Shown piece by piece: positions 7,142-36,341 of a stretch of 64,000 bases of DNA. The translations under genes and the position numbers were made by a program. Each line of letters begins with the position of its first letter. Position 1 is the first letter of the stretch. The notes under the pieces were generated by a model. It saw only the letters and a program-made list of their open reading frames with translations. It was not told where the DNA came from and did not search any database. The stretch is from Mizuhopecten yessoensis (taxonomy: Eukaryota), in assembly GCF_002113885.1 (NCBI RefSeq), contig NW_018408864.1, positions 2,037,412 through 2,101,411 of the forward strand. The letters run 5' to 3'.

Positions 7142-10100
7142 ATGGCATCCAACTGGCAGGGAGATTACTCGGCTCTTCAATGTAAGTGTCTGTAAGTTAG
7201 ACCAGATTGACCAAAAACTTATACATGATGGTAATTAATGATGGATCAGCCGATATAAATAAATCATTCTAAATCATAAAATGATTTACCAATATCAGAG
7301 TTTTATCACATTTATTATAAGGTGACAGTGCCCTGAGTCAACCTGAGAATATCCCTCACAACAAATGGAAGCATGCAAAAACTTTTAAAATGCATTTGTG
7401 ACATCATTATGTACTTTAGGCAATTTTCTAATTAGTCCATCATGATGTTCCCACCTGTTCCTTATGCTTAAATACTTGGTTAGGAACTAAATATCACAAA
7501 GTAAGGTAAATTGAGAATTTTTCTCTTAAAATATAATGAATATAATCCTGATTGACAGTAGGTAACATTTTATTATTTCATCTTTTTCGCCAGTTCCTCA
7601 AATTCTGGTCAACTTCAGTAAAAGTATATCATAGACTATAAGTCATGTTATGAAAGCCTTGATACGAAAATATTCCAACGTCTTTTCATCTTTTTTCAGC
7701 ATAATATATTTTTGTAACATTCATAAATCAGCCTGATTTCTTTAATAAAGACTCACCATCTTAACGTTAAGATTCATTTAAATGACTGGTGTGTTATATT
7801 GACACTTCTTTATAGAAAATGTATATTAATTTCAATGAATATTACCTGTTGTTGGTATTTAATGACAGTTGCTATTGTGGAAGACAAAAAAGATTATGGA
7901 AAGTTCAAGATAGAGAGGAAAGACCTTGGCGATTTTACAAAACTGGCTTTTAGCGTCACTTTTGATGAGGCACAAAGGTGAGTCTGTCCTCTGTCCTGTC
8001 TTTGACCTTTTTTGTCTAGCATGTTTAATTTCCTGACTTTTTATCTAACATACTTTACCTTCATTTACCTGAATGATAAAACTTCGCTGCATCAGATGGT
8101 TATGATGGTGGAATGTTGATGTAGCATTTCATCTGTGCTCTCTCATCCATCCTTAACCATTTATTATTGTCACGTTTTCTCAGGAAAATACTGGAAATTT
8201 TTTCTTATTTTTCTTCATCTATGTAATGCAGGTTCCCCTGTGTCTATGTTTTTATTTTGAGACTGATCTGAAGAACAATATAGTTGCCAAGCAGCCATGA
8301 TAGATTTAGATTTTGACTGATGAAGATTGTTATCGCTATTTCTCTGGAAGTATTTATCAGGCCTGTCTCAAATTTTATTTCTTATGGATACAAAGTGATA
8401 ATTGCTTCAACAATTTATCAAATGTAGGTCACTGTGACCAATATTTACACTTCAGTAACTTTGGATTTAGCATCATTTCTTGTTGTGACTTAGAATTTAC
8501 TCTATTTCCATCAACTGAGGAGGTACATGTTTTAAAAACGTTTTCCATTTAGAATAATCTTTGATTTAAATTAAATTAAAATTGACCCGGTGTATTACTT
8601 ACAGAAATGATAACAATGATCACAGATTTCTGTTAAAACAGCACAGATTAAAGAGTATCACAGACAGGGCATACATTTAACAAGATAAAGGACTGTGTTG
8701 TATACACAATGATAACAAATGTTATTTAAAATATTTAGCCTTTAGCTAGAAGAGACTTAAAAGATTGCAGGGTACATTAAAAATTGCAGTCAAGTTCATG
8801 ATCGTTTTTGTTAAAAGTTCTCTCAGCAAGGTAAGAATTACTTAAGTTTCCTACATTAATTTCACTCTTTGGACAATAAAACTGTAAAAGCATACAGGAC
8901 TAAACTAGTTTAATATTATTGCTTTAATTTCTACTTATGTGTTTTGGTATATATTTTTATCATGAGTTTCGTAGATATTGTTTCTGTCCTCTTTTATCTT
9001 ATTTTATTTTATTTTCTCATGATTTTTACAGCGAGCTGCGAGTTCGGACCAGGAAGGATAATGACTTGTATGGATTTAATTACATCATTAAGGGATTAAT
9101 TAAAACTTCAAACCTTGAAGGGGGGCTAAAGGTGAGTCATTAATCTTTTTATCTCATTCCTGTTTTGGGGAGTAATATATTCCAATAGTACTCCAATAGA
9201 TTCTTAATCTCAAACCTTGGGTACTCACGATGATACTAAACTTTCTTGAGCTCCAAGTTATCTGGGATACTTAATATGGCCAAATTAGTTCTTCTTGTAT
9301 GGCGGAACTGCAAGGGGAAATAAGTTATTTATATGGAGTTTCAGGGTGATACAGTAAATTCTTAATTCATCAGTGAAAACAACTCTAGTTTTACTCTCTA
9401 CGTTGTTTGATATTCATTTTTCATTTCAAAAAAAAAATTAAGATATATGTTTTTAGCAAGTGAGCTTATGCCATGGCGCGGCGTCCGTCGTCCGTCCGTC
9501 CGTCATCCGTCCGTCGTCTGGCGTCAATATTTTATTATTAAACAATTTCTCCTCAATAACCAAACGGCCCAGGAAACTGATATTGAACCTGTAGCATGCT
9601 AGATTGAAAGGCTACCAAGTTTGTTCAATTGAATGACCTTGACCTTCTTTCAAGGTCACAGGGGTCAAATATGTTAAAAACCTGTAATACAACTTCTTCT
9701 GAATAACCAAAATGCATAGGATGATGATGATATTTGGCCAGTAGCATGCTGGAATAAAGGACCACCGAGTTTGTCCAAAGCAAAAAACTATTTAACAACA
9801 TCTTCTGAATAACCAAGAGGTATAAGGTGATGATATTTTGCCAGTAACATGCTCGGATGAAGGACTACCACTTTATTCAAATGAATGACCTTGACATATA
9901 TTCAAGGTCACAGGGGTCAAATATGTTAAAAAAAAACACTTTAAAAGACTTTTTCTTAAAAAGCAAAAGGCCAAGGGTGATGATATTTAGCCATAAACAT
10001 GCTGGGATGAAGGACTACCAAGTGAATGACCTTCGCCCATATTCAAGGTCACAGTGGTCAATATATGTTTAAATCTTTAAATGATTTGTTCTGTATAACC

Positions 10101-10462
10101 AAAAGGTCCAGGGTAATAATATTTTGCAAGAAGCATGCTGGGTTAGAAGACTATCAACTCTGTTCAACCTAATGACCTTGTTCGATATTCAAGGTCACAG
10201 GCGTCAAATGTTTTAATCTTTTAATAGGTTCTTATAAATCAAACGCTGATATTCTGCCCGTAGCTGTATTTTAGTCCACTTTAAAGATTACAAGTGTGAT
10301 ATTGATACCAGGTGAGCGATGCAGGCCCATTGGGCCTCTTGTTCCCTGTTTAATATGATAACTTCATTCAGATGCTATGTTTTCTTTGGTTTACAGAAGG
10401 AGAAGAAGCAGGCATTCCTGCGGATAGAAAAGGATTTGAAAGATGGAAACTTTAATCTTTAG
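7142..10462 (+). CDS. Spliced gene, tandem copy 1: uncharacterised 104-aa protein (possible HSP20/CS-like beta-sandwich)
   Basis: Coding exons 7142-7181, 7869-7977, 9032-9131, 10397-10462. GT-AG introns (gtaagt, gtgagt, gtgagt donors; pyrimidine-rich cag acceptors) in phases 1/2/0 join into one open frame: MASNWQGDYSALQFAIVEDKKDYGKFKIERKDLGDFTKLAFSVTFDEAQSELRVRTRKDNDLYGFNYIIKGLIKTSNLEGGLKKEKKQAFLRIEKDLKDGNFNL*. Good start context (AACATGG); AATAAA at 10468-10473. Exon structure is conserved in two more copies. Confidence 0.85.
9451..10343 (+). mobile_element. HINE-like element in intron 3 of copy 1
   Basis: ttttag...gtgagctt start, (GTCC)n, internal tandem repeats with tgaccttga/aaggtcac, and an end of caggtgagcga plus hairpin aggcccattgggcct plus cttgtt. 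Copy 3 shows the empty T-run site at ~36208-36212. Confidence 0.8.
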
Positions 10463-13366
10463 TGACAAATAAAACACATCATCAGCAATGCCTTTAGAAT
10501 GGTTCAGTACGGCATTTATTGTAGTCAGGATTGCAGAGAGGATCAAAGACAGCTTTTACTTTAAGAGACAATCCTGGAATATTCTAACACAGCATTTAGT
10601 TTATAGTTCACATTTATAAACTGTACATTATACATAATAACGATGTGATTTCTTGTTGCTAGACATTAACACTGGATTACCTCCCCTCGTTGGATAACAT
10701 ATATTAACATAATTATAGACATCAACATAGGATTACATTGGCTCGTTTAATAATACCATGCAGGTATAATACTGGATTATCTCCTGTTTTTGGATAATGT
10801 TTTAAGTTGATAATGAGACTTTTAGAAAAATCGTACTGTTTATTGAATTCATTTCACTGTCTTAATTGGGTAACAACACACTGAATTGTTTGTTATAACC
10901 CAATAGTATGTGTTGCAATGCTAGTCTTTACATCATGATGACCAGAAGAAGAGAGCAGGTACAAATTATACTGCAAAAGTCACAAGGATTAATTTTATCA
11001 TATACATTAACACCGGGTTATCTCCCCTCGTTAGATACTACTATATAGGCATTAACACTGGATTATATTAATTACCTCCATTTGTTGGAGATTAGTATAT
11101 AGGCACTAACACTGGATTTTATTAATTACCTCCATTTGTTGTAGATAACTATATAGGCATTAACACTGGATTATATTAATTAAGGATATGTCTTGTATAA
11201 AAAAAAAATGATAATGAGACTTAAACAAAAATCTGTTTATTTGAGTCATGTCTTTGGAAGGAAAGAGCATGTACAAATTAAGCTGCAAAACACACTATTA
11301 GTGCTAAGAGTATTAAGTAAACCTGAATTAAAGTTGTATTTACCTTGAAACAAAATGAACCTTTATTTTTTTATAAATAAACTTTTATCTACATTCCTGT
11401 ATAATTGTATGTGATGTCTTGTCTACAATGAGTTATGGCTATGAAACAGTGCTAGAAATATAGATCGATTTTTTTTGAAATAATTACTTCTTATGGATAT
11501 ATTTGATGTTCAGCATGGTTGTTTTTCTGTGAAATCTAAACCAAAACATTATAGGTAAAATGATGTACATGTACTGATACAGATAAATAGTTTTACGTCC
11601 TATAGTAGTTTGTAAGACTGCTGACTAGCTACGATATTGCATTAAAATGAAACAATAAAATTGTTCCAGAAGCAGAACTAAAATATGTTTGTGGCAGAAT
11701 TCAATACCTATGTCTGTATTGATATTGTAGTAGAGTTTTAATGTGGTCAGCCAAGCAGAGATGACATATAGAAACACTTGGTTTACATTGACGGAATCCT
11801 TCAATTTCAAACAAAACTACACATCAATAACCGCTCAAATTCAATCTCAATCAAAATTAGAAAATTTTATGCACATAAATAACCGCTCAAATTCAATCTC
11901 AATCAAAAAATCAAAAATCAACATCAGCTTCTACTACTGTTATCGAACCTGGTCGTAGATGCTAGAATGTCTTTGTTGTGTACTATTACTGCTGAAATGT
12001 TCATGCTTATATTGTTTAATGTTACTCTATATCAAACATTACATTCATGTATGTATATTTTTTTTTCTTTTCTAAACTTTACTGTACTGTTGTATAGACA
12101 GACATCACTTCCATTTATATATTTTTTTTATTGAGATGAATGTCATTCACATTTTTTTTTTAATTTACATTAATATTTTGTACTTAATTTAAGTAAGGGA
12201 TCATTTAATTCCTTGTGTTTTCAAAGTGGTCAGGTTTTGTATGAATATAAAAGACCTTATTTGGTATTGCAATGTCTGCTAGCCAACAGAAAATGTTGTT
12301 TGAAGTCTATGTTAAAAATCATGTAGATTTATACTTTTTATATACTTATATCTGAAATATTGTTTTTTTCATAATTCACTTTAGGTTTGGCAACAACACT
12401 CTTTATTCAATGTATTTTGTTTTAGTTTTTATTTGGTGTGGTATTTGTAGTGTAGTTTGTGGTTTGTGTATTGCATTTGTTAGAGGATGTTATGCAGATA
12501 TAGTTAATAAAAATTTGAATAAGACTTCCACATTTTTGTTTACACCTTCCAGGCTGGACATCTTTGAAACATGCTAATATTTTCATTGCGACTATGATAT
12601 CAATCTTACAACGTACCTGACGTACTCATATTAATAAGCGGGGGATGGNNNNNNNNNNNNNNNNNNNNNNNNNNNNNNNNNNNNNNNNNNNNNNATTTTT
12701 GGAATACTGCCAGAGTTGGGGCCCTTGATTAAATATCCTCAAAAAACGTGTCCTCATGCAAGAGGGCTGTCATTCATTCATCCTTTCATTCAGTCGTTGA
12801 ATTATTCATTCAATTGTTTACTTATTCTCTCATTGATTTCTTTTCATAACATCCTTTCTTTTACATTTTATTCCGTGTTTACATTCATTCCTACATTTAT
12901 TATTTACATTAATTCTCTCTTTGTTTACACTCATTCACTCATTTCATCTATTTATTCATACAATTTGAAGTTTTCTCCTTTATAATATATATATGATATA
13001 AAAATATATATAATATAATAATAGTAATACTGTGACTATATATACTAAGGTATATGACAAATATTACTATATGTCTTCTATGATACGTGTCGACTGCTGA
13101 CGGACTTATTTGAAACAGTGTTTTTAAATAGTTATATAATATAATATATAGAGATACTATATAATACTTAGTAAATGTACTGAGGCATGACAAATATGAG
13201 GCAGGAAGGAGGGGAACCCCCTGATTGGCCAGCTAGGCACCGGATATATCACTAATGAGCATGCGAGGAGAGCAAACATTTCAAACTAATAAGGGGAGAG
13301 AACTTTTATTAAAAAAAACAACATCTAAGTAATATTTAAAATAATAATGAATTAAGGTCGTTATTA

Positions 13367-13950
13367 TTAAAAATTGTTCGAATTAACCCCATTTATTTTG
13401 GAGGATAATAGAAATTTACTTTTCATCGCAATAAACTTCTCTACTTTCATTGTATGTGCAAAAATAATCTTACACATTTCAAAAATTGGAATGTAGTCTT
13501 TAATTCGGCTACAGTATATATGATGTTTTATTATTACCAGAAAATGGTGTAATAATAGTCCAATCTTTGAATTTCCAAAAAGAATATCTATATCTTTAAA
13601 AACAATATAGGGCTGTTTATCATCATGCTCAGTATACCAAACATTAAAATCATCCAATAATCTCTGTGCATAATAGCATTGAGTAAAATTGGGTTCCAAT
13701 GTTTTTGTTTCTCTGTTACAGAATGTACATAATTGATTTGTTATTAATTTCATTTTTACTAACTCTTTATTAGTTGGTAAAATCCTATGATTGATTTTGT
13801 ATTGGAAAGTTTGTAATTTTGTTTCCATTGTACAGTTAAATATAAATATCTCGCCAGTTGAAATCCTCATCCATCTCAAAAACTGATTTCCATTTTTCTT
13901 GGCTATGTTTGGGCATTATTATGACATTTGTAACAAGATTTCTGTAGATA
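13367..13950 (-). mobile_element. L1/Tx1-type LINE ORF2 remnant (unit 2 copy)
   Basis: ORF 13367-13879 contains FQYKINHRILPTNKELVKMKLITNQLCTFC; duplicated with the unit. Confidence 0.85.
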
Positions 13951-16819
13951 ATAATGTATCATCAGCGTACAAATGTATATATGCAAACTACATTAATTGA
14001 CACTAAGTGGTATGTCATTGACATACATGATGCACATCAGAAGACCAGGTTTCCTGGGGTATACTTACTGTAAGCTGTGTCTCGCTTAAACCTGGTTTTA
14101 ATTTTACAACCAAAAATCTGAAAAGGCACAAACAAAACTGAAGAGAAACTGGAAGCACATTAATTAGTTTACTTGTCAAAACGAAACAAGTCCAGATTTA
14201 TTTTGAAAGCAGTACACTGTAACTTTAAGCCCTGAATTGCCTTCATTTGTCAGTTATTGATAAAAGCCTGTCCAGTTTGCATCAACATTGCCTATGAATA
14301 TCATCTGAAAGTAATATGATTATAGGTTTCACTGTACCCGGACCAGATCAATGCTTAAATGTATAATAGTGATCTTATCCAAACAAGGTAAACACTTAAA
14401 ATAGAAAGTGTATTTAAAAATAAAGATATATCTTTTCACTCCGGATACGACCAGTCACTGCGATGCCTATTCTTTTCCTTTTACCAGGGCGACACAATTC
14501 TGCTCAAGAGTCAAATAAACAATTACAGGCAAAGTCTCTGAACAATATATTTACGTTGGCCAGTGCTATACATAAAACTGACGTTTATTCAATGCGTAGA
14601 ACTACAAACTGCAAAAAAATAATATCTGCTGAAGCAATGACATCAAATGTTACTATTTATTATCAGAATTAACGAGAGAAATGGGAAGTTCCATCTGTTT
14701 GAAGCTTCTTTAAAAGTTTAGTTAAAACGAATATATTTCTCATGAGCAAGACAGGGACATTATTTGAATATTTTCCAACGAATAAATTAAACGTCAAAAT
14801 AACAACGGACATTTATATTTTTATTGTAAAGATATATATTCAGTGGAGGGTAAATGTATTTTTTCGTTAGTATCGATTTGAGTAATTTGTTATGATTGAT
14901 TAAATAATTTACCATAGAACAACCGATTTTAGCCTTCAAATCGAAACAGTACCCCAGGAAATGCAAATTTGTGGCAAAGTTTTCAGTTCACATATTTTAT
15001 TTATCATTTTATTTGTAAATGTGTTTATCAAACCATTACTGCAATGAGAGGGGCAGATCAGCCCTTAGTGTTACCAATAAGACTCAATATTTTCATTCAT
15101 TGAGACAAAATAGCTCGGAAGTCGTAGTCGTTCGTAACTATGCAACGTCAGAACATGTTGGCTGGCTTATTGAAATCTAGCGTAATCTGTGTATGTATAT
15201 AACAGTTATTATAAATCAGTTTTGTGGACATGTTTCGCTTGACACGTTTTGTTTGTAATGTAGCGGAACTGGACTGGACCGATCGTTGGAAGCAGAAGAC
15301 TCTTACCCTTCTGGAACACATGCTCTTATTATCATTGTACAATGAACTTCCCCAGGGGTCTACAAACAACACTTTCTTTGATTACATTCTGCCCTGGTTC
15401 GATAGATTTCGAGTTCGAACAACGGTCTTGTGCACACTGCGATAGTACGTATTCTTTCTTAAACAAGGACAATGGACAGGAGATGTACAATGGTAACTAG
15501 AGTACTTTTTCTCCAAAATATTATACAACATACAAACAAAATCCTCTCTGATTTTCGCTGGCGCCGATTGTGCCTCCGCCTTCCCTCCTTAAAAAATATC
15601 AAACTATTAATATTAAAATTGGACTGTATCAAGTGTGACCCCATCACGATGTCTCCCGTCAAAATATGCAATGGGATTTTTTGAAACGTTTACAAAATGT
15701 TATACATGAAACTACACATGCAACATGCAGTAATATCTCACCCGTCGAGTCATCAGTGATTTTTTTCACTAGTTCTTCACTGTTTTATTGCTCCGATCGG
15801 GATCCCTTCTTAATCGTATTCTTTTGATTTAGGTTGGTCATGATCAACTTTCTTCACGCCTAGTGTATGCATTTTGTTGTTATTTAAATCGACTTTTTAG
15901 TCCAGTTTGGTCGTTTGTGTATTGACGATTGTTGATGTTTCACTCCTCTTGTTTATTTCTGAACGGTATAATTTGAAAACAAAATATTTCACCTGCAACT
16001 TCAAATTGGGTTCACCATTGTGGTCTTACTACTGAGACTTGTAAAAACACAATTGGAAACGATAAATGCCATTGTCATTGTACGTTAAGTATGTAGCCAC
16101 ATGTATTGATGTGTTTTCTTTCTTCAGAACGACATTTACTGCAATCCGGATAAAAGATTGCATACCGTTCCATCTTTTAGTTTAAAATTTTGTTTTCCGG
16201 TTTCGTTTCGTTGTTTACCGTCCTGCTTTCAGTTCCACACTTTGACCAGGGACTTCTACTCCACAGGTTTACAAGATTTAAACTGCAAACGCTTGCGTGC
16301 ATGAAGCAATTGTTTTAGTGATATTCTATGACAAGGGTTTAGTTTGTTTTTATAAGGGAGTAAAGACAGGTCCTGCACAACGCAACTATTAATATTGTCA
16401 TTATTGATCTTGTTACTACTTGTTTGACCTTCAACTGCCAGGTACGTTATTGGATAGGGGCGCATATAAGATCACTATTGATAGTAGTTGCGTGACCCTG
16501 TGGGTCCTGTTAATGAGTTATATCCACTGGCAGGTGCTTGGTACATAAACATAAATATAAATCCTTGGACACACATATTATATATAAGGAAGTTGTAGTA
16601 TTAAACATTTAAAAAATGATTACGCTTCTCAATTACATCCTGCTACAAGGAACTTACTTCCTTTTAGCACCATTGTAAGAACGGCCGACTGGATAGCTGG
16701 GAGGGTGCGGTAGGGGCTGATTTGATTGCTGTTGGAAACACTTCTTATTTCCTGTTTAATTATTATTAAATATTTAATTGATTTACATAATCTCAAATGA
16801 GAACAAAATACTGATGCAA

Positions 16820-17728: not shown

Positions 17729-18208
17729 GTATAGATAATTCCATTTGGAGCCTAGTAACCTGATGAGTCCAGGAGTACAAGACAAAGCACTGGCAACTCT
17801 GACTAACAGTTTGGCTTTTGTACGGGTCACACAGGAAATATTTTATTAATTCTACCACATCACAGTCTCATTTCAATTTTTTCCTTAGAGAATCTTTCTA
17901 ACAAGACAAACATAAAATCAAAAGCAAACTTCATACATTCTTTATAAGGAAAAGGGAGGAAAGATTGAGTAATATCGTTTAGAATGTAGTTAATTTTTGA
18001 CAACTGTTATAAAGAAGGTGGTTAGTGTTTCAGTATACCACACAGTTAACGTTTAGTGTTGTTGGCATTTTAAAGCCTGACAAATCTGCCCTTCTTGATT
18101 ACTAATTCATAATTGATCCAACCTTTTTGTTTTGTTTGAAATAGGTAACCTATTTCTAAAGGAAGAGTCTTCTACAGCAGTGAGCCAGGTACAACAGGTT
18201 TGAAAAAC

Positions 18209-21200
18209 ATGGCATCCAACTGGCAGGGAGATTACTCGGCTCTTCAATGTAAGTGTCTGTAAATTAGACCAGATTGACCAAAAACTTATACTTGATGGTA
18301 ATTAATGATGGATCAGCCGATATAAATAAATCATTCTAAATCATAAAATGATTTACCAATATAAGAGATTTATCACATTTATTATAGGGTGACAGTGCCC
18401 TGAGTCAACCTGAGAATATCCCTCACAGCAAATGGAAGCATGAAAAAACTTTTAAAATGCATTTGTGACATCATTATGTACTTTAGGCAATTTGCCAATT
18501 AGTCCATCAAGATGTCCCCACCTGTTCCTTATGTTTAATTACCTGGTTAGAAACTAAGTATCACAAAGTAAGGTAAAATGAGAAGTTATCTCTTAAAATA
18601 TAATGAATATAATCCTGATTGACAGTAGGGAACATTTTATTATTTTATCTTTTTCGCCAGTTCCTCAAATTCTGGTCAACTTCAGTAAAAGTATATCATA
18701 GACTATTAGTCATGTTACGACACCCTTGATACGAAAATATTCCAACTTCTTTTCATCTTTATTCGGCATTATATATTTATGTAACATTCATAAATCAGCC
18801 TAATTTCTGTAATAAAGACTCGCCATCTTAACGTTAAGATTCATTTAAATGACTGGTGTGTTATATTGACACTTCTTTATAGAAAATGTATATTAATTTC
18901 ACTGAATATTACCTGTTGTTGGTTTTTAATGACAGTTGCTATTGTGGAAGACAAAACGGATTATGGAAAGTTCAAGATAGAGAGGAAAGACCTTGGTGAT
19001 TTTACAAAACTGGCTTTTAGCGTCACTTTTGATGAGGCACAAAGGTGAGTCTGTCCTCTGTCCTGTCTTTGACCTTTTGTCTAGCATGTTTAATTTCCTG
19101 ACTTTTTATCTAACATACTTTACCTTCATTTACCTGAATGATAAAACTTCGCCTCATCAGATGGCTATGATGGTGGAATGTTGATGTAGCATTTCATCTA
19201 TGCTCTCTCATCCATCCTTAAACATTTATTATTGTCACGTTTTCTCAGGGAAATACTGGACATTTTTTTCTTATTTTTCTTCTTCTATGTAATGCAGGTT
19301 TCCCTGTGTCTATGTTTTTATTTTGAGACTGATCTGAAGAACAATATAGTTGCCAAGCAGCCATGATAGATTTAGATTTTGACTGATGAAGATTGTTATC
19401 GCTATTTCTCTGGAAGTACTTATCAGGCCTGTGTCAAATTTTATTTCGTATGGATACACAGTGATAATTGCTTCAACAATTTATGAAATGTAGGTCACTG
19501 TGACCAATATTTACACTTCAGTAACTTTGGATTTAGCATCATTTCTTGGTGTGACTTAGAATTTACTCTATTTCCATCAAATGAGGTGATGCATGTTTTA
19601 AAAACGTTTTCCATTTAGAATAATCTTTGATTTAAATTAAATTAAAATTGACCCGGAGGTTTACTTACAGAAATGATAACAATGATCACAGATTTCTGTT
19701 AAAACAGCACAGATTAAAGAGTATCACAGACAGGGCATACATTTAACAAGATAAAGGACTGTGTTGTATACACAATGATAAAAAATGTTATTTAAAACAT
19801 TCAGCTTTTAGCTAGAAGAGACTTAAAAGATTGCAGGGTACATTAAAAATTGCAGTCAAGTTCGTGATCGTTTTTGTTAAAAGTTTTCCCAGCAAGATAA
19901 AAATTACTTAAGTTTCCTACATTAATTTCACCCTTTGGACAATAAAACTGTAAAAGCATACAGGACTGAACTAGTTTAATATTTTTGCTTTATTTTCTAC
20001 TTGTATGTTTTGGTATTTATTTTTATCATGAGTTTCGTAGATATTGTTTCTGTCCTCTTTTATCTTATTTTATTTCCTTTTCTCATTATTTTTTACAGCG
20101 AGCTGCGAGTTCGGACAAGGAAGGATAATGACTTGTATGGATTTAATTACGTCATTAAAGGATTAATTAAAACTTCAAACCTTGAAGGGGGACTAAAGGT
20201 GAGTCATTAATCTTTTTATCTCATTCCTGTTTTGGGGAGTAATATATTCCAATAGTACTCCAATAGATTCTTAATCTCAAACCTTGGGTACTCACGGTGA
20301 TACTAAACTTTCTTGAGCTCCAAGTTATCTGGGATATTCAATATGGCCAAATTAGTTCTTCTTGTATGGCGGAACTGCAACTGGAAATAAGTTTTTTGTA
20401 TGGAGTTTCAGGGTGATACAATTTCTCCTCAATAACCAAACGGCTCAGGAAACTGATATTGGGCCTGTAGCATGCTGGATTGAAAGGCTACCAAGTTTGT
20501 TTAAATGAATGACCTTGACCTTCTTTCAGGGTCACAGGGGTCAAATATGTTAAAAACCTGTAATACAACGTCTTCTGAATAACCAAAATGCATAGGATGA
20601 TGATGATATTTGGCCAGTGGCATGCTGGAATAAAGGACTACCGAGTTTGTCCAAAGCGAAAAACCATTTAACAACTTCTTCTGGATAACCAAGAGGTATA
20701 AGGTGATGATATTTTGCCAGTAACATGCTCGGTAAAGGACTACCAACTTTGTTCAAATGAATGACCTTGACATATATTCAAGGTCACAGGGGTCAAATAT
20801 GTTAAAAAACTTTAAAAGACTTTTTCTTAATAAGCAAAAGGCCAATGGTGATGATATTTAGCCATTAACATGCTGGGATGATGCACTACCAAGTGAATGA
20901 CCTTCGCCCATATTCAAGGTCACAGTGGTCAAGATATGTTAAAACTTTAAATGATTTGTTCTGTATAACCAAAATGTCCAGGGTAATGATATTTTGCCAG
21001 AAGCATGCTGGGTTGGAAGACTATAAACTCTGTTCAACCTAATGACCTTGTTCGACATTCAAGGTCACAGGCGTCATATGCTTAAATATTTTAACACTGA
21101 AATCTGCCTGTAGCTGTATTTTAGTCCACTTTAAAGATTACAAGTGTGATATTTATACCAGGTGAGCAATGCAGGCCCATTGGGTCTATTGTTCCCTGTT

Positions 21201-21312
21201 TAATATGATAACTTCATTCAGATGCTATGTTTTCTTTGGTTTACAGAAGGAGAAGAAGCAGGCATTCCTGCGGATAGAAAAGGATTTGAAAGATGGAAAC
21301 TTTAAACTTTAG
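18209..21312 (+). CDS. Spliced gene, tandem copy 2: 104-aa paralog
   Basis: Exons 18209-18248, 18936-19044, 20099-20198, 21247-21312, with the same splice sites and phases as copy 1. Three amino-acid differences from copy 1 (K>T, I>V, N>K) and 4 synonymous codon changes. Confidence 0.85.
20421..21193 (+). mobile_element. 5'-deleted HINE-like element in intron 3 of copy 2
   Basis: Same element as 9451-10343, with a deletion removing its left end and the adjacent intron. Confidence 0.75.
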
Positions 21313-27127: not shown

Positions 27128-27650
27128 GGGGCTGGGAAATAAATGGGTCTAAATGCGTTCTCTGGCCTTCCAAAAGTTATACCACACGGCAATATGATGG
27201 TCGAGTTCTGCTTGCAGTGTCCAGTTTTGACAACTGAAATTTCGTGGAAGCCCCGCGTAAATTTAGCGCAGATCTATTTATATATGTCACGTGGTTGTTT
27301 CGAAGGTAAGGCAGTGAAGATAACAAGAATAGCACGCCGTCATGTACCATGTCTGACTCAACTAGCGGACAAGACAGCAATACTATACGTAAATAATTGT
27401 TTTCAAAGGTCATGTATGATGCAAGTGTAGTATTCCTACCTATATGTTGTTGTTATTTATAACGGTATTGATACCTCGTGCCTGTCATGACTTTTGCATG
27501 CATCTTTTTCTTTCGCCGCGATGTTTACATTTGACCTTGTTGATGACGTGAATTTCAGCAAAATTTGTATCGGTATATTTCATAAGAGGGTATTTTAAAC
27601 ATGTGTATGCCATTTTAGCAAATATGACATTTTTTCCCCGACCAGCCCCT
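27128..27650. mobile_element. TTAA-flanked MITE (Kolobok-like non-autonomous DNA transposon)
   Basis: TTAA-GGGGCTGG ... CCAGCCCCT-TTAA termini; absent from units 1 and 2. Confidence 0.65.
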
Positions 27651-27853
27651 TTAAAGACAAAATAGTTCACATGCAGCTTCAATCTGATTAAAATCATATG
27701 TTACATGGCTTCGTTTACTTCGTACTACGCCTGGACATCTGATTGTGCTGCGGTCAGGGTCACGTTCAGGTGACCTTTATATTTATAGATACTCATTAAA
27801 TGTTGACCAATCAGAGACCCTCTTTCAAAAGGGCGCTCGGAGTTGTAACAAAT

Positions 27854-27985
27854 ATGGCGAACACTGATGAGAATGATGCGAAAGTTCTGAAGTTATTTGA
27901 GATTGATCGTCTGAAACCCGAACAGAAAAAGATATTCGAAGCTTTATTAGAGAAGAAAGACTGTATGGCGGTGTTGCCTACGTAA
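27854..27985 (+). pseudogene. RecQ-like (SF2) helicase N-terminal fragment within an insertion, probably transposon-derived
   Basis: MANTDENDAKVLKLFEIDRLKPEQKKIFEALLEKKDCMAVLPT matches RecQ motif 0 leading into motif I (LPTGxGKS), then breaks off. A CCAAT box lies at ~27807. The enclosing insertion (~27685-28137) is absent from units 1/2. Confidence 0.7.
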
Positions 27986-29941
27986 TTATTACCCAATGGG
28001 TACGTTTTCCTTGGCGTCGTAGAAACGTCAGTTTCCGCCGCCATATTTGTTTTGGAAAACTAATCTGTTCGATACCCCTCGCTATTTATCTATCAACCAT
28101 GATATTTCGATTCGCTGGCAAACTTTTGCCAGCACGCCTCTGAGAGTTGTAATAATACAATTGGAAACTATCAATTTCATTTTCATTGTACATACCGTAC
28201 GTAGCTACATGTATGTATGTGTTTTCTTTCTACAGAATTACATTTCTGCAATCCGGATAAAGATAGCATACCGTTTCATCTTTTAGTTTGTAATTTTGTT
28301 TTCCGGTTTCGAGTTGTTTATCGTCGGCGAATGACCCGTGTGGCGGTGCATGCTTTCGGTTCGACATTTTGACCAGGGACTTCTACTTCACAGGTTTACA
28401 AGGTTTAAACTACACACGTTTGCATGCATGAAGCAATTATTTTAGTGATATTCAATGACAAGTGTTCCATTTGTTTTTATAAGGGAGTAAAGACAGGTCC
28501 TGCACAACGCAACTACTATTAATATTGAGCTTGTTAGACTTTCAGCCGTTGGTTACGTTATTTGATATAACGCATCCAACGGATGAAAGTCTCACAAGAT
28601 CGATATTGATAGTAGTTGCGTGCCCCATGTGGTCCTGTTAATGAGTTATATCCACTGGCAGGTACTTGGTACATAAAAATAAATATAAAAACATATTTGG
28701 TGTGTATACATAGGATGCTTACTATGTTAATAACTTACAATATATATGCGAAATATTTTCTAAGGAGTAGACTAATAATGTTACATTTTCAGTGGCATAA
28801 ACACTATATATGTAGTACTAATATTAAAACCCGCCTCCTCTGCCCCGCCGCCGGCCGCATAAAAAAGGTCCGGTAGTTAAAAGCTACGTTATCGCAGCTA
28901 ATGATATTGGTGTACCGTCCAAGGCCTGTTACATTGTCCTTGGCATTATCAGCAGTTGATTTTGTATACTTAACGGAGGACCTCAGTGAGTCACTGCATA
29001 CTTTATTATCTGTAGGATACGACAGATTGTGTCAATTCAGATACTAAAATGATATGGTTGCCGTTTAACTTCAAGCTAGACTTCCTGTTTAACTCAACCT
29101 GTGTAGCGGAAGCTGGGAGACTATTAGTACCTATATTTAAATACATGACCTACACACAATATATAAAAGGCTTGTTATCAAAAGCTACGTGATCACAGCG
29201 AGGGGACTATGACTGGATCCATAGTGGAAGCTCACTACTTTCTTCCTGTTAAAGATAGTAGTTTTGGCCCTCTCTGTGGTTGCTGCACGTTAGATACTGT
29301 TTTGGAGCCTGATCAAATATAAAAAGGAAGTCGCAGTATTGTACATTTTAAAAATGATTAAGTTTCTCAATTACATCCTGCTACAGGGAACTTACTTCCT
29401 TTTAGCACCATTGTAAGAACGGCCGACTGGATAGCTGGGAGGGTGAGGTGGGGGCTGATTTGTTTCCTGTTGGAAACACTACTTATTTTCTGTTTAGTTA
29501 TTAAACATTTAATCGATTTACATAATCTCAAATGAGAAAAAAGTACGGATTCAGTATGTCATGGCGCATCGTCCGTCATCTGTCTATCCATCAACTTTTC
29601 CTTTAACACGATACTAGTCCTGAACGGCTAAGTGGTTTTTAACTCAATTTGGTTTGGAGCATCTTTGGGCCAAGGGCAGTATTTTTTTTATAAACGCGGT
29701 TGTGGTCCCCCTGGGGGCAGAGGGGTGGGGCCAATAGGAGAAATAGAGGTAAACATTTAAAATCATTTTTCTACCATAAAGATTAAGGAATTTCATCCAA
29801 ATTTGGTCTGGACCATCATGAGGTCAAAGGGCACTCTAATTTGTATAAACGGTGGGTGCCGAGCTACTATTTTATTTGCAATTGACAACAAAAGTAATAT
29901 CATACAATACAAACATTCATTTACATTATACACAATATACA

Positions 29942-32566
29942 ATGTGTTACTGTCGTAATGCTGACATATAGACACATGTTACTGTCGTAATGCTAACATA
30001 TAGACACATGTTACTGTCGTAATGCTGACATATAGACACATGTTACTGCCGTATAGCTGACATATAGACATGTGTTACTGTCGTAATGCTGACATATAGA
30101 TACATGCTACTGTCGTAATGCTGACATATAGACAGTAACATATGTATATATGTCAGAATTACGGCAGTGACATGTGTCTATATGTCAGCATTACGACATT
30201 AACACATGTCTATATGTCAGCTATATGGCAGTAACATGTGTCTATATGTCAGTTATACGGCAGTAACACATGTCTATATGTTACTGCCGTATAGCTGACA
30301 TATAGACACATGTCTATATGTCAGCATTACGTCAGTAACATATGTCTATATGTCAGCATTACGTTAGTAACATATGTCTATATGTCAGCATTACGACAGA
30401 AAAATATGTCTATATGTTAGCATTACGACAGCAACATGTGTCTATATGTTAGCATTACTACAGTAACATGTGTCTATATGTCAGCATTAGGACAGTAACA
30501 TATGTCTATATGTCAGCATTACGTCAGTAACATATGTCTATATGTCAGCATTACGTTAGTAACATATGTCTATATGTCAGCATTACGTCAGTAACATATG
30601 TCTATATGTCAGCATTACGATAGTAACACATGTCTGTATGTTAGCTATACGACAGTAACATGTGTCTATATGTCCGCATTACGACAGTAACATGTGTCTA
30701 AATGTTAGCATTACGACAGTAACATGTGTCTAAATGTTAGCATTACGACAGTAACATGTGTCTAAATGTTAGCATTACGACAGTAACATGTGTCTATCTA
30801 TTAGCATTACGACAGTAACACATGTCTATATGTCGGCATTACGACAGTAACATATGTCTATATATTAGCATTACGACAGTAACATGTGTCTAAATGTTAG
30901 CATTACGACAGTAACATATGTCTATATTTCAGCATTACGACAGTAACACATGTCTATCTGTCAGCATTACGACAGTAACATATGCCTATATGTTAGCATT
31001 ACGACAGTAACACATGTCTGTATGTTAGCTATACGACAGTAACATGTGTCTATACGTCAGCTATACGGCAGTAACACATGTCTATTTGTTAGCATTACGA
31101 CAGTAACATGTGTCTATGTCTGTATGTTAACTATACGACAGTAACATGTGTCTATATGTCCGCATTACGACAGTAACATGTGTCTAAATGTTAGCATTAC
31201 GACAGTAACATATGTCTATATATTAGCATTACGACAGTAACATGTGTCTAAATGTTAGCATTACGACAGTAACATGTGTCTATACGTCAGCTATACGGCA
31301 GTAACACATGTCTATATGTTACTGCCGTATAGCTGACATATAGACATGTGTTAATGTCGTAATGCTGACATATAGACACGTGTTACTGTCGTAATGCTGA
31401 CATATCGACATGTGTTACTGTCGTAATGCTGAAATATAGACATATGTTACTGTCGTAATGATAACATATAGACATATGTTACTGTCGTAATACTAACATA
31501 TAGACATATGTTACTGTCGTACTGCTAACATATAGACATATGTTACTGTAGTAATGCTGACATATAGACACATGTTGCTGTCGTAATGCTGACATATAGA
31601 CAAATGTTACTGTCGTAATGCTAACATATAGGCACTTGTTACTGTCGTAATGCTGACATATGGACATGTGTTACTGACGTAATGCTGACATATAGACACA
31701 TGCTACTATCGTAATGCTGACATATAGACATATGGTACTGTCGTAATGCTGACATATAGATACATGCTACTGTCGTAATGCTGACATATAGATACATGCT
31801 ACTGTCGTAATGCTGACATATAGATACATGCTACTGTCGTAATGCTGACATATAGACATTTGTTACTGTCGTAATGCTAACATATAGACAGGTGTTACTG
31901 TCGTAATGCTGACATATCGACATGTGTTACTGTCGTAATGCTGAGATATAGACATGTGTTACTGTCGTAATTCTGACATATAGACATGTGTTACTGTAGT
32001 AATGCTGACATATAGACACATGTTGCTGTCGTAATGCTGACATATAGACATGTTTTACTGTCGTAATGCTGACATATAGTCATGTGTTACTCTCGTAATG
32101 CTAACATATAGACACATGTTACAGTCGTAATGCTGACATATAGACATGCGTTACTGTCGTAATGCTGACATATAGACAGTAACATATGTATATATGTCAG
32201 AATTACGGCAGTGACATGTGTCTATATGTCAGCATTACTACAGTAACATATGTCTATATGTTAGTATTACGACAGTAACATATGTCTATATTTCAGCATT
32301 ACGACAGTAACACATGTCTGTATGTTAGCTATACGACAGTAACATGTGTCTATACGTCAGCTATACGGCAGTAACACATGTCTATATGTTACTGCCGTAT
32401 AGCTGACATATAGACACATGTTACTGTCGTAATGCTAACATATAGACATGTGTTACTGCCGTATAGCTGACATATAGACACATGTTACTGTCGTATAGTT
32501 AACATACAGACATATGTAACTGTCGTAATGCTAACATATAGACATGTGTTACTGTCGTAATGCTAA
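29942..32566. repeat. 32-bp minisatellite with repeated orientation switches
   Basis: Unit tgttactgtcgtaatgctgacatatagacaca, about 80 units; strand switches near 30132, 30279, 30311, 31318, 32176 and 32388. Confidence 0.95.
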
Positions 32567-33343
32567 GGATTCCTCTCATGCACCTCTTATTATCATTATC
32601 TGATATACTATACCCGCAATATTATATATGATGCACTACAGTATCTATATATTACAAGCTGTATCCTACAGTCTTGGTAGCTTGCCAAACGGTGAACGAG
32701 TTACAAAGTCCCATGTTAAAAATCTCCTTCTATCCCATGAAACAGTACAGCACAATAAATACATGGTATGCACACCACAACGATATGTATAGATATTTCA
32801 TGCGTAGCCTAGTTACCTGATGAACCCAGAAGCACAAGACAAAGCACTGGCAACTCTGACTAACAGTTTGCTTTTCGTACGGGTCACACAGGCAATACTT
32901 TATTAATTCTACCACAACACAATCTCATTTCAAATTTTTCCTTAGAGAATCCTCCTAACAAGACAACATAAAAACAAAAGCAAAATCCATACATTCTTTC
33001 TAAGGAAAAGGGAGGAAAGACTGAGTAACATCGTTTGATGTGTAGGTAATGTTTGCCAACTGATTTAAAGAAGGTGGTATTTACCAAAATGACCATGAAC
33101 AATCCTATCGTTTCAGTGTCCCACACAGTTGATATTAAGTGTTGTTGGCAGTAATACAGAGCAGAGCAGACAATTCTAAAGGTGATTACACACAGAATTA
33201 TAGCCTGACACATCTGCCCTTCTTGAAGTTGGTTACTAATTCATAATTGATCCACCTTTTTTTGTTTTGTTTAAAATAGGTAAGCTATTTCTAAAGGAAG
33301 AGTCTTCTACAGCAGTGAGCCAGGTACAACAGGTTTGAAAAAC

Positions 33344-36341
33344 ATGGCATCCAGCTGCGAGGAAGAATACTCGGCTCTTTACCGTAAGTGTCTGGAAATT
33401 AGACCAGATTGACCATACACTTATACTTGATGGTAATTAATGATGGATCAGCCTATATGAATAAATCATTTTAAGTAATCAAATGAGTTATCGATATTAG
33501 ATATTTATCACATCTATTATAGGGTGACAGTGCCCTGGGTCAACCTGGGAATATCACTCACAACAAATGGAAGCATGAAAAACCTTTTAAAATGCATTTG
33601 TGACATCATTATGTACTTTATGCAATTTGCTAATTAGTCCATCAAGATGTCCCCACCTGTTCCTTATGTTTAATTACTTGGTTAGGAACTAAGTATCACA
33701 AAGTAAGTTAAAATGAGAAATTTTCACTTAAAATATAATGAATATAATCCTGATTGACAGTAGGTAAAATTTTATTATTTTACCTTTTTCGCCAGATCCT
33801 CAAATTCTGGTCAACTTCAGTAAAAGTATATCATAGACTATTAGTCATGTTTTAAAAACCTTGATACGAAAATATTCCAACTTCTTTTCATCTTCATTCA
33901 GTATAATATTTGTATGTAACATACATAAATCAGTCTAATTTCTGTAATAAAGACTCACCATCTTAACGTTAAGATTCCTTTAACTGACTGGTGTGTTATG
34001 TTAATAATTCTTTATAAAAAATACATCTGTAATGGTTTAACCAAGATAAATTATTCAAAATGTATATTAATTTCACTGAATATTACCTGTTGTTGGTTTT
34101 TAATGACAGTTGGTATTGTGGATGACGAAGATAATTACGTAAAGTTCAAGATAGATAGGAAAGATCTTGGTGATTTTAGAAAGCTGGATTTTAGCGTCAC
34201 TTTTGATGAGGCACAAAGGTGAGTCTGTCCTCTGTCCTGTCTTTGACCTTTTTGTCTAGCATGTTTAATTTCCTGACTTTTTATCATACTTTACCTTCAT
34301 TTACCTGAATGATAAAACTTTGCCTCATCAGATGGCAATGATGGTGGAATGTTGATGTAGTATTTCATCTTTGCTCTCTCATCCATTCTTAAGCATTTCT
34401 TATTGTCACTATTTCTCAAGGAAACACTGGACAAATATTTCTTTTTTTCTCTATGTAATGTAGATTCCCCTTTGTCTATGTTTTTATTTTGAGACTGATC
34501 TGAAGAACAAAATAGCTGCCAAGCGGCAATGATAGATTTTGACTGATGAAGATTGTTATCGCTATTTTTCTGGATCGAGCCATCTGACTCATAGGTTGAA
34601 TATCAAACAATTACATCATGTAATACCTGTACAAGATATTTTGATACAAATTTAAATTGATGAAGTGGAGAGTGAGCTTACAAATTACACAAGTAGTTTT
34701 CCATGTCAGACATTGATTTCTCTACGTTTACTCATAGCGCAATATAAATACATTCCTATATTGCATAATTCTTTTACATTATTAGTACTCAATAATTTCG
34801 TTAACTTATAAACATTAGGACTTCTGTGATAGAATCGCTTGATATATTTACGTCTCAGGTCTTGATGTAATGGACATTTTAGGATGAAATTCATTTTCTA
34901 TATCACCAGAAGCACAGCGAGAACAATGATGATATATTCTGTCGAACACCATTGTTCCGTCTACCTACTTCAATATTTAAATCATGAGACGACAATCTTA
35001 AACATGTAATAAGGCGTTTGTACTTAGATTCTATAGATTTACATAAGTAAAATTGAAGACAAACATTATCAAAAAGGTGCTGGTATAAATAACCTTTAGG
35101 TGACCTTGCTAAATTTGGTATCATCTTCTGTTTACAATTATCTAAAATTCTTTGTTCTATATTCTTAAAAGCAATGTTCTTGTCAGGTCTGTCTCAAACT
35201 CAATTTTGTATTGATACACAGTGAGAATTGCTTCAACAATTTATTAAATGTAGGTCACTGTGACCAATATTTACACTTCAGTAACTTTGGATTTAGCATC
35301 ATTTCTTGGTGTGACTTAGAATTTACTCTATTTCCATCAAATGAGGTGGTGCATATATGTTTTTAAAATATTTTCAAGTTAGAATAAACTTTGTTTTGAA
35401 TTGAAATAAAACAGACCCGGAGGTTTACTTACAGAAATGATAACAATGATCCCAGATTTCTGTTAAAACAGCACAGATTTAAGAGTATCACAGACAGGGC
35501 ATATATTTAACAAGATAAATGACTGTGTAGCATACACAATGAAAAAAATGTTTTAAAAAAATCTTAAGTTTCTTACATTAACTTCACTCTTTGGACAATA
35601 AAACTGTAAAAGCATACATGAGACAGAACGTTTTTGTGAGCTTCCTGGAGATCACCATCAGGACTGAACTCGTTTAATATTTTTCTTTAATTATTACTTG
35701 TGTGTTTTGGTATATATTTTTATCATGAGTTTCGTAGATATTGTTTGTGTCCTCTTTTATCTTATTTCATTTCCTTTTCTCATTTGTTTTACAGACAGCT
35801 GTGGGTTCGGACCAGGAAGGACAATGTCTTGTATCAATGTAATTACCTCATTAAGGGATTAATTAAAACTTCAAACCTTGAAGGGGGACTAAAGGCGAGT
35901 CGCTAATCTTTTTATCTCATTCCTGTTTTTGGGAGTAATAGATTCCAATAGTATTCCAATAGATTCTTAATCTCCAAACTTGGGTTCTCACAGTGATACT
36001 ATACTTTCTTGAGCTCCATCGGGGATACTTAATATGACCAAATTAGTTCTTCTTGTATGGCGAAACAGCAAGTGGAAATATATTTTGATAAGGAGTTTCA
36101 GGGTCATGCAGTAGTTTCTTAATTCGTCAGTGAACGCAACTCTAGTTTTACTTTCTACATACACATGTTTGATATTCATATTTCATTTCCAAAATTTGAG
36201 ATATAGGTTTTTCCCTGTTCAACATGATAACATCATTCAGATGCAATGGTTTTCTTTGGTTTACAGAAGAAGAAGGATTATGCATCCCTGCGGATAGAAA
36301 AGGATTTGAAAAATGGAAAATTTAATCTTAATGACAAATAA
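33344..36341 (+). CDS. Spliced gene, tandem copy 3: diverged 107-aa paralog with GC-AG third intron
   Basis: Exons 33344-33383, 34110-34218, 35795-35894, 36267-36341 give MASSCEEEYSALYLGIVDDEDNYVKFKIDRKDLGDFRKLDFSVTFDEAQRQLWVRTRKDNVLYQCNYLIKGLIKTSNLEGGLKKKKDYASLRIEKDLKNGKFNLNDK*. Frame intact; the intron-3 donor is AAG|gcgagt; the stop codon is shifted by 3 codons. Confidence 0.75.
34575..35180 (-). mobile_element. 5'-truncated CR1/L2-group LINE in intron 2 of copy 3
   Basis: Minus-strand peptides ITCLRLSSHDLNIEVGR and FILKCPLHQDLRRKYIKRFY are typical LINE ORF2 C-terminal motifs; absent from the same intron in copies 1/2. Confidence 0.8.

What the first reader, a model, noticed from the sequence alone, without database searches (positions are those of the whole stretch)
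7142..36341. Hidden tandem gene family of small (104-107 aa) proteins, invisible to the ORF track
Seen: three full copies of a four-coding-exon gene with conserved splice sites and phases, open frames and AATAAA next to the stop. The tail at 1-158 implies a fourth unit upstream. I recognise no named gene; the protein has no signal peptide or TM segment and is K/D/E-rich. Inference: a recently amplified, possibly lineage-specific cytosolic protein family. This is the best candidate for an undescribed system in this window.
Basis: partly seen in the sequence, partly recalled or inferred. Interest (0 to 1): 0.8.

Follow-up and report, generated by a model that had tools for sequence, protein, structure and literature searches.

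The report
Scallop-only tandem family of small proteins
The window holds three of six tandem copies of a real, spliced and transcribed Yesso-scallop gene for a ~104-residue protein found only in scallops; public annotation already lists it as "uncharacterized protein", and it is predicted to fold like the small-heat-shock/p23 (HSP20-like) chaperone domain.

Summary
Copies A, B and C each have four coding exons of 40, 109, 100 and 66 or 75 nt, identical phases and open frames of 104, 104 and 107 codons. Copy C's third intron has a GC donor, not GT. The array has six units, three of them upstream of the window, and nothing similar lies elsewhere in the 988 Mb assembly. RNA-seq shows introns 1 and 3 exactly as predicted (234 and 223 spliced reads in one poly(A) run), plus an untranslated leader exon. 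The middle junction was not listed.

The genome is Mizuhopecten yessoensis. All six models equal RefSeq "uncharacterized protein" entries (LOC110465300, -302 to -305, -329), so the family is uncharacterised rather than hidden. Relatives appear only in Ylistrum balloti, Pecten maximus and one unidentified transcriptome. Between genera, exon lengths are conserved and dN/dS is 0.08-0.26.

No Pfam or PDB sequence match exists. Two AlphaFold models (pLDDT 74 and 85) both match HSP20/alpha-crystallin and CS/p23 domains (Z up to 10.0).

Verdict: a lineage-restricted, recently amplified, divergent stand-alone HSP20-like domain family. A chaperone-type role is inference only. Interest is moderate to low.

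The parts
1..158 (+). Downstream tail of the preceding unit (U3, LOC110465303), followed by a 920-N gap
   Evidence: 100% identical to 22361-22518. U3's gene ends 1134 nt before the window starts.
5239..5284 (+). Putative core promoter of copy A (TATAAG at 5247-5252), 46 nt identical in A, B and C
   Evidence: Alignment A4. The promoter function is inferred, not shown.
5277..5337 (+). Untranslated leader exon of copy A. The donor at 5337 is shown by RNA; the 5' end is inferred from the TATA position.
   Evidence: Joint 5337->7078, GT..AG, 76 reads in run X24.
7078..7181 (+). Copy A exon with 64 nt of 5'UTR and the first 40 coding nt (ATG at 7142)
   Evidence: Acceptor and donor both seen in spliced reads. 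Sequence.
7869..7977 (+). Copy A coding exon 2 (109 nt)
   Evidence: Joint 7181/7869: 234 reads in X24, 9 in X22, 2 in X19 and one X1 contig.
9032..9131 (+). Copy A coding exon 3 (100 nt)
   Evidence: Depth 79/56 in X24 and donor joint 9131/10397 seen. The acceptor joint 7977/9032 was not listed. Exon length is conserved in Pecten and Ylistrum.
10397..10462 (+). Copy A coding exon 4 with the stop codon. The transcript continues to at least 10700.
   Evidence: Joint 9131/10397: 223 reads in X24. Depth is 150-165 up to 10700.
12649..12694 (.). Assembly gap at the A/B unit junction. It is intergenic, and about 395 nt of unit sequence is missing by paralogy.
16381..16441 (+). Copy B leader exon (by paralogy with A)
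   Evidence: Alignment A4, 93% identical. Not tested separately with reads.
18145..18248 (+). Copy B 5'UTR and coding exon 1 (ATG at 18209)
18936..19044 (+). Copy B coding exon 2
20099..20198 (+). Copy B coding exon 3
   Evidence: The marker 9092 G>A, carried by copy B (U5) and by U2, is seen in 14% of RNA reads.
21247..21312 (+). Copy B coding exon 4 with the stop. The protein equals P0006 (LOC110465302).
28470..28552 (+). Copy C promoter core and leader-exon equivalent. The donor is altered relative to A and B.
   Evidence: Alignment A4. Coordinates are approximate and expression was not tested.
33280..33383 (+). Copy C 5'UTR (1 difference in 64 nt from A) and coding exon 1 (8 differences in 40 nt)
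34110..34218 (+). Copy C coding exon 2
35795..35894 (+). Copy C coding exon 3, followed by a GC (not GT) donor
36267..36341 (+). Copy C coding exon 4 with the stop (107 aa). The protein equals P0008 (LOC110465329).

Best explanation
This is a genuine, transcribed, scallop-restricted gene family. In this Mizuhopecten yessoensis assembly it forms a head-to-tail array of six units of about 11-15 kb, and the window holds units 4-6.

Each gene has one untranslated leader exon and four coding exons. The product is a soluble, charged protein of 104-107 residues with no signal peptide, consisting of a single domain. That domain is predicted to be a seven-stranded beta-sandwich of the HSP20-like chaperone superfamily, the fold of alpha-crystallin domains and of CS/p23 domains.

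The array arose by recent unequal-crossover duplication within the Mizuhopecten lineage. The protein is under purifying selection between genera. The most diverged copy, C, evolves at or above the neutral rate.

Most likely mode of action (inferred, not shown): a minimal stand-alone protein-binding module of the p23/CS or small-HSP type, meaning a co-chaperone-like adaptor or a holdase. Gene dosage was raised by amplification, and expression differs strongly between samples.

My confidence by step: real expressed gene family about 0.97, HSP20-like fold about 0.8, chaperone-type function about 0.35. The overall figure of 0.55 is for the statement as a whole.
For: - Gene structure and open frames.
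- Spliced reads at two of the three coding junctions, plus the leader junction, in RNA-seq. Three runs from separate studies and an X1 contig show the 7181/7869 joint. Depth in X24 is more than 30 times that in X19 and X22.
- Paralog-specific variants in the reads show that at least three copies are transcribed.
- Only six copies exist, all in one array.
- The models are identical to RefSeq proteins.
- Orthologs in Ylistrum and Pecten have the same 109 and 100 nt exons and phases.
- dN/dS between genera is 0.08-0.26, Fisher p from 3e-6 to 2e-16.
- dS within the array is 0.02-0.13.
- Fold: two separate AlphaFold runs on members 48% identical (alignments of largely the same relatives) gave pLDDT 73.8/pTM 0.66 and 84.5/pTM 0.71. 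Foldseek on PDB, an exhaustive VIA-align search and the ESM-Atlas shape search returned almost only HSP20/ACD and CS domains (p23, Sba1, Sgt1, Shq1, PIH1D1, NudC). The best results were Z 10.0 with 87 residues aligned and Foldseek E 9e-4. Twenty chains scored Z >= 8, all from this superfamily.
Against: - There is no sequence-level link to any family. Pfam gave nothing at E <= 10 for all ten members. PDB sequence and profile searches gave nothing. hhalign against the scallop's own CS domain gave probability 0.6%. Language-model neighbours were noise.
- The models rest on shallow alignments of 9-10 sequences.
- Z of 8-10 is only modestly above the tool's stated background of 7-8 for unmatched models, and small beta-sandwiches are common.
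- A shared fold does not show function.
- Small-HSP hallmarks are absent: no N-terminal region and no C-terminal I-x-I motif. p23's acidic tail is absent too.
- The one perfect heat-shock element (6287-6299 and its paralog) lies in the leader intron and is not above chance.
- The tissue or condition of the high-expressing sample is unknown.
- Junction 7977/9032 was not directly listed.
Confidence: 0.55

Rival explanations
1. An orphan beta-sandwich protein unrelated to chaperones. The HSP20-like match would reflect a generic or convergent small sandwich, or a bias of the predictor. The real function would be something else, for example a structural, ligand-binding, immune or tissue-specific scallop protein.
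For: - No sequence or profile similarity to CS or HSP20.
- Z-scores are near the tool's background range.
- The strictly conserved loop (residues about 75-84, with L78, G80, G81, K83 and K84 invariant) has no obvious counterpart motif and was modelled with low confidence in P0002.
- Expression differs more than 30-fold between samples, as expected for a specialised tissue product.
Against: The hit lists from three different search methods and two models are almost purely HSP20-like superfamily. They cover the whole domain, with rmsd 2.2-3.0 A over 78-87 of about 96 residues. Unrelated sandwiches appear only lower down.
Confidence: 0.3
2. The copies, or at least copy C, are decaying duplicates with no function of their own. 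Only one or a few units would matter, and copy C's amino-acid changes would reflect relaxed constraint rather than adaptation.
For: - Copy C against the others: dN/dS is 1.2-1.6, not different from 1 (p = 0.68).
- Copy C has a GC donor in intron 3 and an altered leader-exon donor.
- Its protein branch is long: 0.36 against 0.02 or less for the others.
- Its expression was not tested.
Against: - All six frames and nearly all splice sites are intact.
- Copy C's promoter core (46 nt) is identical to A's, and its 64-nt 5'UTR has one difference, while its CDS differs by 13%. Uniform decay would not give that pattern.
- U1-U5 pairs with enough changes show dN/dS of 0.15-0.33.
- At least three copies are transcribed.
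Confidence: 0.15
3. The frame belongs to a transposon or is a chance or annotation artefact.
For: Transcribed repeats lie inside intron 3 and around the units.
Against: - Only six copies exist, all in one array.
- Introns are conserved in three genera.
- Purifying selection is strong.
- There is no transposon domain.
- Reads are spliced exactly at the predicted sites.
Confidence: 0.01

Closest known systems
CS-domain proteins (p23/PTGES3/Sba1; CS domains of Sgt1, Shq1, PIH1D1/kintoun, NudC)
   Same: - The predicted seven-strand sandwich of about 90 residues starts almost at the N-terminus.
- These give the tightest structural superpositions: rmsd 2.2-2.3 A over 78-80 residues, Z 8.1-9.4.
- The best ESM-Atlas shape hit is kintoun's PIH1_CS region, TM 0.69.
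- Like p23, it is a small soluble cytosolic protein built around one such domain.
   Different: - No PF04969 match at E <= 10, and hhalign probability 0.6% against the scallop's own CS domain.
- No acidic C-terminal tail.
- pI is 6.3-9.1 depending on the member.
- It is restricted to scallops, whereas p23, Sgt1 and Shq1 occur across eukaryotes (from my own knowledge).
- Hsp90 binding is untested.
Small heat-shock proteins (alpha-crystallin domain, PF00011 HSP20)
   Same: These give the highest Z-scores: Sulfolobus Hsp20.1 ACD at Z 10.0 with 87 residues aligned, and Mycobacterium marinum sHSP at Z 9.7. The best Foldseek E is 9e-4.
   Different: - No PF00011 match.
- There is no N-terminal region, since the domain starts at about residue 9.
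- There is no C-terminal extension with an I-x-I/V motif (read directly from alignment A1).
- Four coding exons.
- No significant heat-shock element.
Minimal sHSPs such as the C. elegans Hsp12 group (about 110 aa, essentially an alpha-crystallin domain alone). Recalled from my own knowledge, not tested here.
   Same: It is a stand-alone HSP20-like domain of about 100-110 residues with almost no extensions, encoded by a small multigene family.
   Different: By my recollection Hsp12 proteins are recognisable as HSP20 by sequence. The scallop family is not.

Membership tests
HSP20-like chaperone superfamily (fold level: alpha-crystallin and CS domains) | Compact 7-9-strand beta-sandwich with ACD/CS topology covering the whole domain | tested here: met
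   Two AlphaFold models were used. The top 30 or so hits in Foldseek/PDB, VIA-align wide and ESM-Atlas are ACD or CS domains, with Z up to 10.0 and rmsd 2.2-3.0 A. This was met on predicted structures only, not on an experimental one.
CS domain family (Pfam PF04969) | Sequence-profile match at or near the gathering threshold | tested here: not met
   No hit at E <= 10 for any of 10 members. hhalign against a scallop CS domain gave probability 0.6%.
CS domain family (p23-type co-chaperones) | Binding to Hsp90 or another partner through the sandwich face | not testable with these tools
   This needs pull-down or ATPase-inhibition assays.
Small heat-shock proteins (Pfam PF00011 HSP20) | Sequence-profile match to the alpha-crystallin domain | tested here: not met
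   No hit at E <= 10. The PDB profile search found no sHSP.
Small heat-shock proteins | Variable N-terminal region plus a C-terminal extension with the I-x-I/V anchoring motif | tested here: not met
   The domain spans residues about 9-95 of 96-107. The C-terminus has no I-x-I/V in alignment A1.
Small heat-shock proteins | Oligomer formation and ATP-independent holdase activity, often with heat inducibility | not testable with these tools
   Only one heat-shock-element site was found (with its paralog), inside the leader intron and within chance expectation.
Lineage-restricted tandem gene family | Several intact, co-oriented paralogs in one array, conserved exon structure, evidence of transcription and of selection, and no relatives outside the clade | tested here: met
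   Caveat: every unit junction carries an N run, so the exact copy number rests on scaffolding.

The most novel reading that the evidence does not exclude
A previously unnamed sequence family within the HSP20-like superfamily, restricted to scallops. It would be a minimal stand-alone co-chaperone or holdase. It has been amplified independently in Mizuhopecten (six copies) and in Pecten (at least three copies). One Mizuhopecten copy (C) would be under diversifying selection on the protein while its promoter and 5'UTR stay frozen. That would be a young example of neofunctionalisation of a chaperone-fold module, linked to a scallop-specific tissue or stress response.
Probability: 0.25. Interest if true: 0.45.

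Novelty: new member of a known kind. Interest (0 to 1): 0.3.

Why it matters
It gives six "uncharacterized protein" entries of a commercially important scallop, and their Pecten and Ylistrum orthologs, a structural class and a testable hypothesis: a CS/alpha-crystallin-like binding module.

It also documents a clean case of recent tandem amplification of a taxonomically restricted gene, with one fast-evolving copy. Bivalves are known for lineage-specific expansions of stress and immune genes, so this is a modest addition rather than a surprise. It opens no long-standing question.

Tried and rejected
- Pfam on single exons by reference gave only a sub-threshold chance hit to the integrin beta cytoplasmic domain, E 0.089.
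- Pfam on all full-length members gave nothing.
- phmmer and a profile search against PDB sequences gave nothing beyond E 9.8.
- The ESM-Atlas feature search scored 0.82, which is the noise range.
- hhalign against the scallop CS domain gave nothing.
- In the exhaustive profile search, two of the four hits were rejected as spurious. P0013 is a Q/N/E low-complexity repeat protein. P0014 is a bacterial GW/SH3-like repeat protein. Both score by summing many weak stretches.
- A word search with the divergent member P0012 found no further relatives.
- Literature searches by LOC identifiers, by the SRR accessions of P0012 and by general terms found no paper on this family.
- The heat-shock-element scan was not above chance.
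- ORFs of 110 aa or more in 38-64 kb have no Pfam domain, so no informative neighbouring gene was found.
- The protein tree is unresolved apart from the Pecten pair.
- The first repeat finder was swamped by a satellite, so I replaced it with my own BLAST.
- The joined spliced protein was never typed into a search tool. Exons were searched by reference. Full-length searches used database proteins P0001-P0008, which a script reading the stored files showed to be identical to the spliced models.
Full report
**1. What is in the sequence**

A self-comparison of the first 40 kb shows three head-to-tail units:
- A, 1196-12648
- B, 12695-23646, 94.5% identical to A
- C, 23662-38600, 84-94% identical. 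It is longer because a 2.6 kb 32-nt satellite sits in its leader intron.

The four coding exons are 40, 109, 100 and 66 nt (75 nt in C). Phases are identical, and the frames are 104, 104 and 107 codons. AATAAA follows or overlaps the stop. All introns are GT..AG except C's third, which has a GC donor.

**2. The assembly gap, tested first**

The gap at 12649-12694 lies at the A/B unit junction. It is 2187 nt past A's stop and about 3.7 kb before B's leader exon, so no exon, intron or frame crosses it.

- The 100 nt to its left are identical to 23547-23646.
- The 100 nt to its right are identical to 1589-1688.
- By paralogy, about 395 nt of unit sequence is missing there, so the flanks are not contiguous.

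Every unit junction in the window carries an N run (159-1078, 12649-12694, 23661). The order and number of units therefore rest on scaffolding.

**3. Extent of the family in this genome**

Searches of the window's own 988 Mb assembly with exon 2 DNA, and with exon 2 and exon 3 peptides by reference, found six copies. All are on this contig, co-oriented and 11-15 kb apart. I fetched the 40 kb upstream and rebuilt all six models. All are intact.

**4. Transcription**

Four runs from four studies were laid on 5300-10700.

| Joint | Intron ends | Reads |
|---|---|---|
| 7181/7869 | GT..AG | 234 in poly(A) run X24, 9 in X22, 2 in X19, one X1 contig |
| 9131/10397 | GT..AG | 223 in X24 |
| 5337/7078 (not predicted) | GT..AG | 76 in X24 |

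- The third joint shows an untranslated leader exon.
- Upstream of it, a 46-nt block containing TATAAG is identical in A, B and C.
- Joint 7977/9032 was not among the listed rows. The tool masked a repeat at 8984-9023 right beside the acceptor and dropped rows there. Exon 3 still has exon-like depth (79/56).
- That junction is supported indirectly: the 109 and 100 nt exons are conserved in two other genera, and the homologous P0012 ORF is uninterrupted on assembled contigs.
- Coverage stays at 150-165 up to position 10700. The AATAAA next to the stop is therefore not shown to be the poly(A) signal in use.
- Depth in X24 is more than 30 times that in X19 and X22, so expression is sample-specific. 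The samples are coded, so I cannot say which tissue.
- Variants in the reads match paralog differences. About half the reads carry copy A's private alleles, 14% carry 9092 G>A (carried by U2 and U5), and about 2% carry U1's marker. At least three copies are transcribed.

**5. Identity**

Single exons given by reference had no Pfam family.

An uninterrupted 84-codon open frame containing exon 2 (7727-7978), given by reference, retrieved a 107-aa NCBI protein of Mizuhopecten yessoensis. Its 90% cluster, plus one more cluster, holds six entries. A script reading the stored files showed they are identical to my six models:

| Unit | Protein | RefSeq gene |
|---|---|---|
| U1 | P0001 | LOC110465300 |
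| U2 | P0004 | LOC110465304 |
| U3 | P0005 | LOC110465303 |
| U4 (copy A) | P0002 | LOC110465305 |
| U5 (copy B) | P0006 | LOC110465302 |
| U6 (copy C) | P0008 | LOC110465329 |

All are named "uncharacterized protein". So the genes are in public annotation. They are "hidden" only from a prokaryote-style ORF list.

**6. Relatives**

- A word search with P0002 found only Ylistrum balloti (74% identity) and two Pecten maximus proteins (62%).
- An exhaustive HMM search of 1.84 billion representatives with the family profile found four hits. They were the scallop cluster, a 96-aa protein from three Logan contigs of SRR18313975-77 (P0012, 48% identity, organism unknown), and two repeat proteins that I reject as spurious.
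- A word search with P0012 added nothing.
- No oyster, mussel or other annotated proteome gave a hit. The family is restricted to scallops plus that one unidentified source, at the sensitivity of profile HMMs.
- No paper mentions the LOC identifiers.

**7. Evolution**

The Pecten and Ylistrum genes have the same four coding exons: 37 or 34, then 109, 100, and 57 or 75 nt. Pecten has a further partial tandem copy 8-10 kb upstream.

- Between genera, dN/dS is 0.08-0.26, with Fisher p from 3e-6 to 2e-16. This is a protein under purifying selection.
- Within the array, dS is 0.02-0.13 against more than 1 between genera. The six copies therefore arose, or were homogenised, within the Mizuhopecten lineage.
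- Pecten's two full copies also pair together (99/99 support), so amplification was independent there.
- Copy C differs from the others at 29-36 non-synonymous and 6-7.5 synonymous sites. That gives dN/dS of 1.2-1.6, not significantly different from 1 (p = 0.68).
- Copy C's 5'UTR has 1 difference in 64 nt and its promoter core none in 46 nt, while its CDS differs by 13%. That pattern fits change focused on the protein better than uniform decay, but it does not prove it.

**8. Fold**

No member has a Pfam hit at E <= 10. There is no PDB sequence or profile hit. hhalign against a CS domain from the same genome gives probability 0.6%.

- AlphaFold on P0002 with 9 sequences gave a seven-strand all-beta model (pLDDT 73.8, pTM 0.66).
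- A separate run on P0012 gave the same architecture with higher confidence (pLDDT 84.5, pTM 0.71).
- Foldseek/PDB, the exhaustive VIA-align search and the ESM-Atlas shape search all returned nearly pure lists of alpha-crystallin domains and CS domains: p23/Sba1, Sgt1, Shq1, PIH1D1/kintoun and NudC.
- The best values were Z 10.0 (Sulfolobus Hsp20.1 ACD, 87 residues) and Foldseek E 9e-4. Twenty chains scored Z >= 8.
- CS domains superpose most tightly, at 2.2-2.3 A over 78-80 residues.

The scores are moderate: the tool's own background for unmatched models is Z 7-8. The uniformity of the hits across methods and across two models makes the superfamily assignment reasonably safe. I cannot decide between the CS and ACD sub-types. 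The lack of an N-terminal region and of a C-terminal I-x-I motif, together with the tighter CS superpositions, lean towards a p23/CS-like stand-alone domain.

**9. Mechanism**

Shown:
- a spliced, polyadenylated transcript
- a conserved protein
- tandem amplification

Predicted:
- an HSP20-like sandwich
- cytosolic location, since there is no signal peptide or TM segment, GRAVY is -0.72 and pI is 6.3-9.1 across members

Inferred:
- It acts as a small protein-binding module of the co-chaperone or holdase type, with dosage raised by amplification.
- The invariant loop around residues 75-84 (L78, G80, G81, K83, K84) is a candidate interaction site.

**10. Verdict**

This is a taxonomically restricted, recently amplified family that is already annotated but uncharacterised. 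I place it here as a divergent member of the HSP20-like fold class. It is not a new kind of system.

Noticed in passing
window 41609-45153: This 3.5 kb satellite has a 33-nt unit (about 107 copies, 80-87% matches) and strong C-over-G skew (GC skew down to -0.47). One frame stays open for 470 codons, giving an 11-residue repeat, but it has no Pfam match.
   Followed up: partly
window 29945-32564: This 32-nt satellite has about 80 copies in blocks of opposite orientation, forming a large palindromic array. It lies inside the leader intron of copy C and accounts for much of unit C's extra length.
   Followed up: partly
window 9457-10343 (intron 3 of copy A) and the paralogous 20418-21094: This is a highly repeated, transcribed element. 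RNA and contig depth is far above the exons (X1 word depth up to about 289,000), with many loose ends and internal 135-136-nt tandem duplications. It is probably a SINE- or MITE-like repeat.
   Followed up: no
window 5239-5284, 16343-16388, about 28470-28515: This 46-nt block with TATAAG is identical in copies A, B and C although its surroundings in C are only 78% identical. The 64-nt 5'UTR upstream of the ATG has one difference in C, while the first 40 coding nt have eight.
   Followed up: partly
G000:C5537:2022028-2022067 (unit U2, upstream of the window) and window 33344-33383: Exon 1 of U2 encodes the same SSCEEE N-terminus as the diverged copy C, while the rest of U2 matches U3-U5. This is either a mosaic from gene conversion or unequal crossover, or a retained ancestral state.
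   Followed up: partly
L028:378-473 and 1856-1912 (Pecten maximus LR736851.1): Exon-3-like and exon-4-like pieces of a third Pecten paralog lie 8-10 kb upstream of LOC117342182. The family is therefore tandemly duplicated in Pecten as well.
   Followed up: partly
window 6287-6299 and 17369-17381: A perfect three-unit heat-shock-element consensus (TTCnnGAAnnTTC) lies in the leader intron of copies A and B. It counts as one independent site and is within chance expectation.
   Followed up: yes
window 159-1078, 12649-12694, 23661; contig 2016126-2016158: N runs sit at the same relative place of each unit junction, and the flanks are 100% identical between units. This suggests the assembler struggled with the array, so the copy number may be mis-estimated.
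   Followed up: partly
window 50357-50894, 55329-56582, 62561-63181: Three further satellites, with 21-nt, 41-nt and 30-nt units, lie in the gene-poor right half of the window. ORFs of 110 aa or more there have no Pfam domain.
   Followed up: partly
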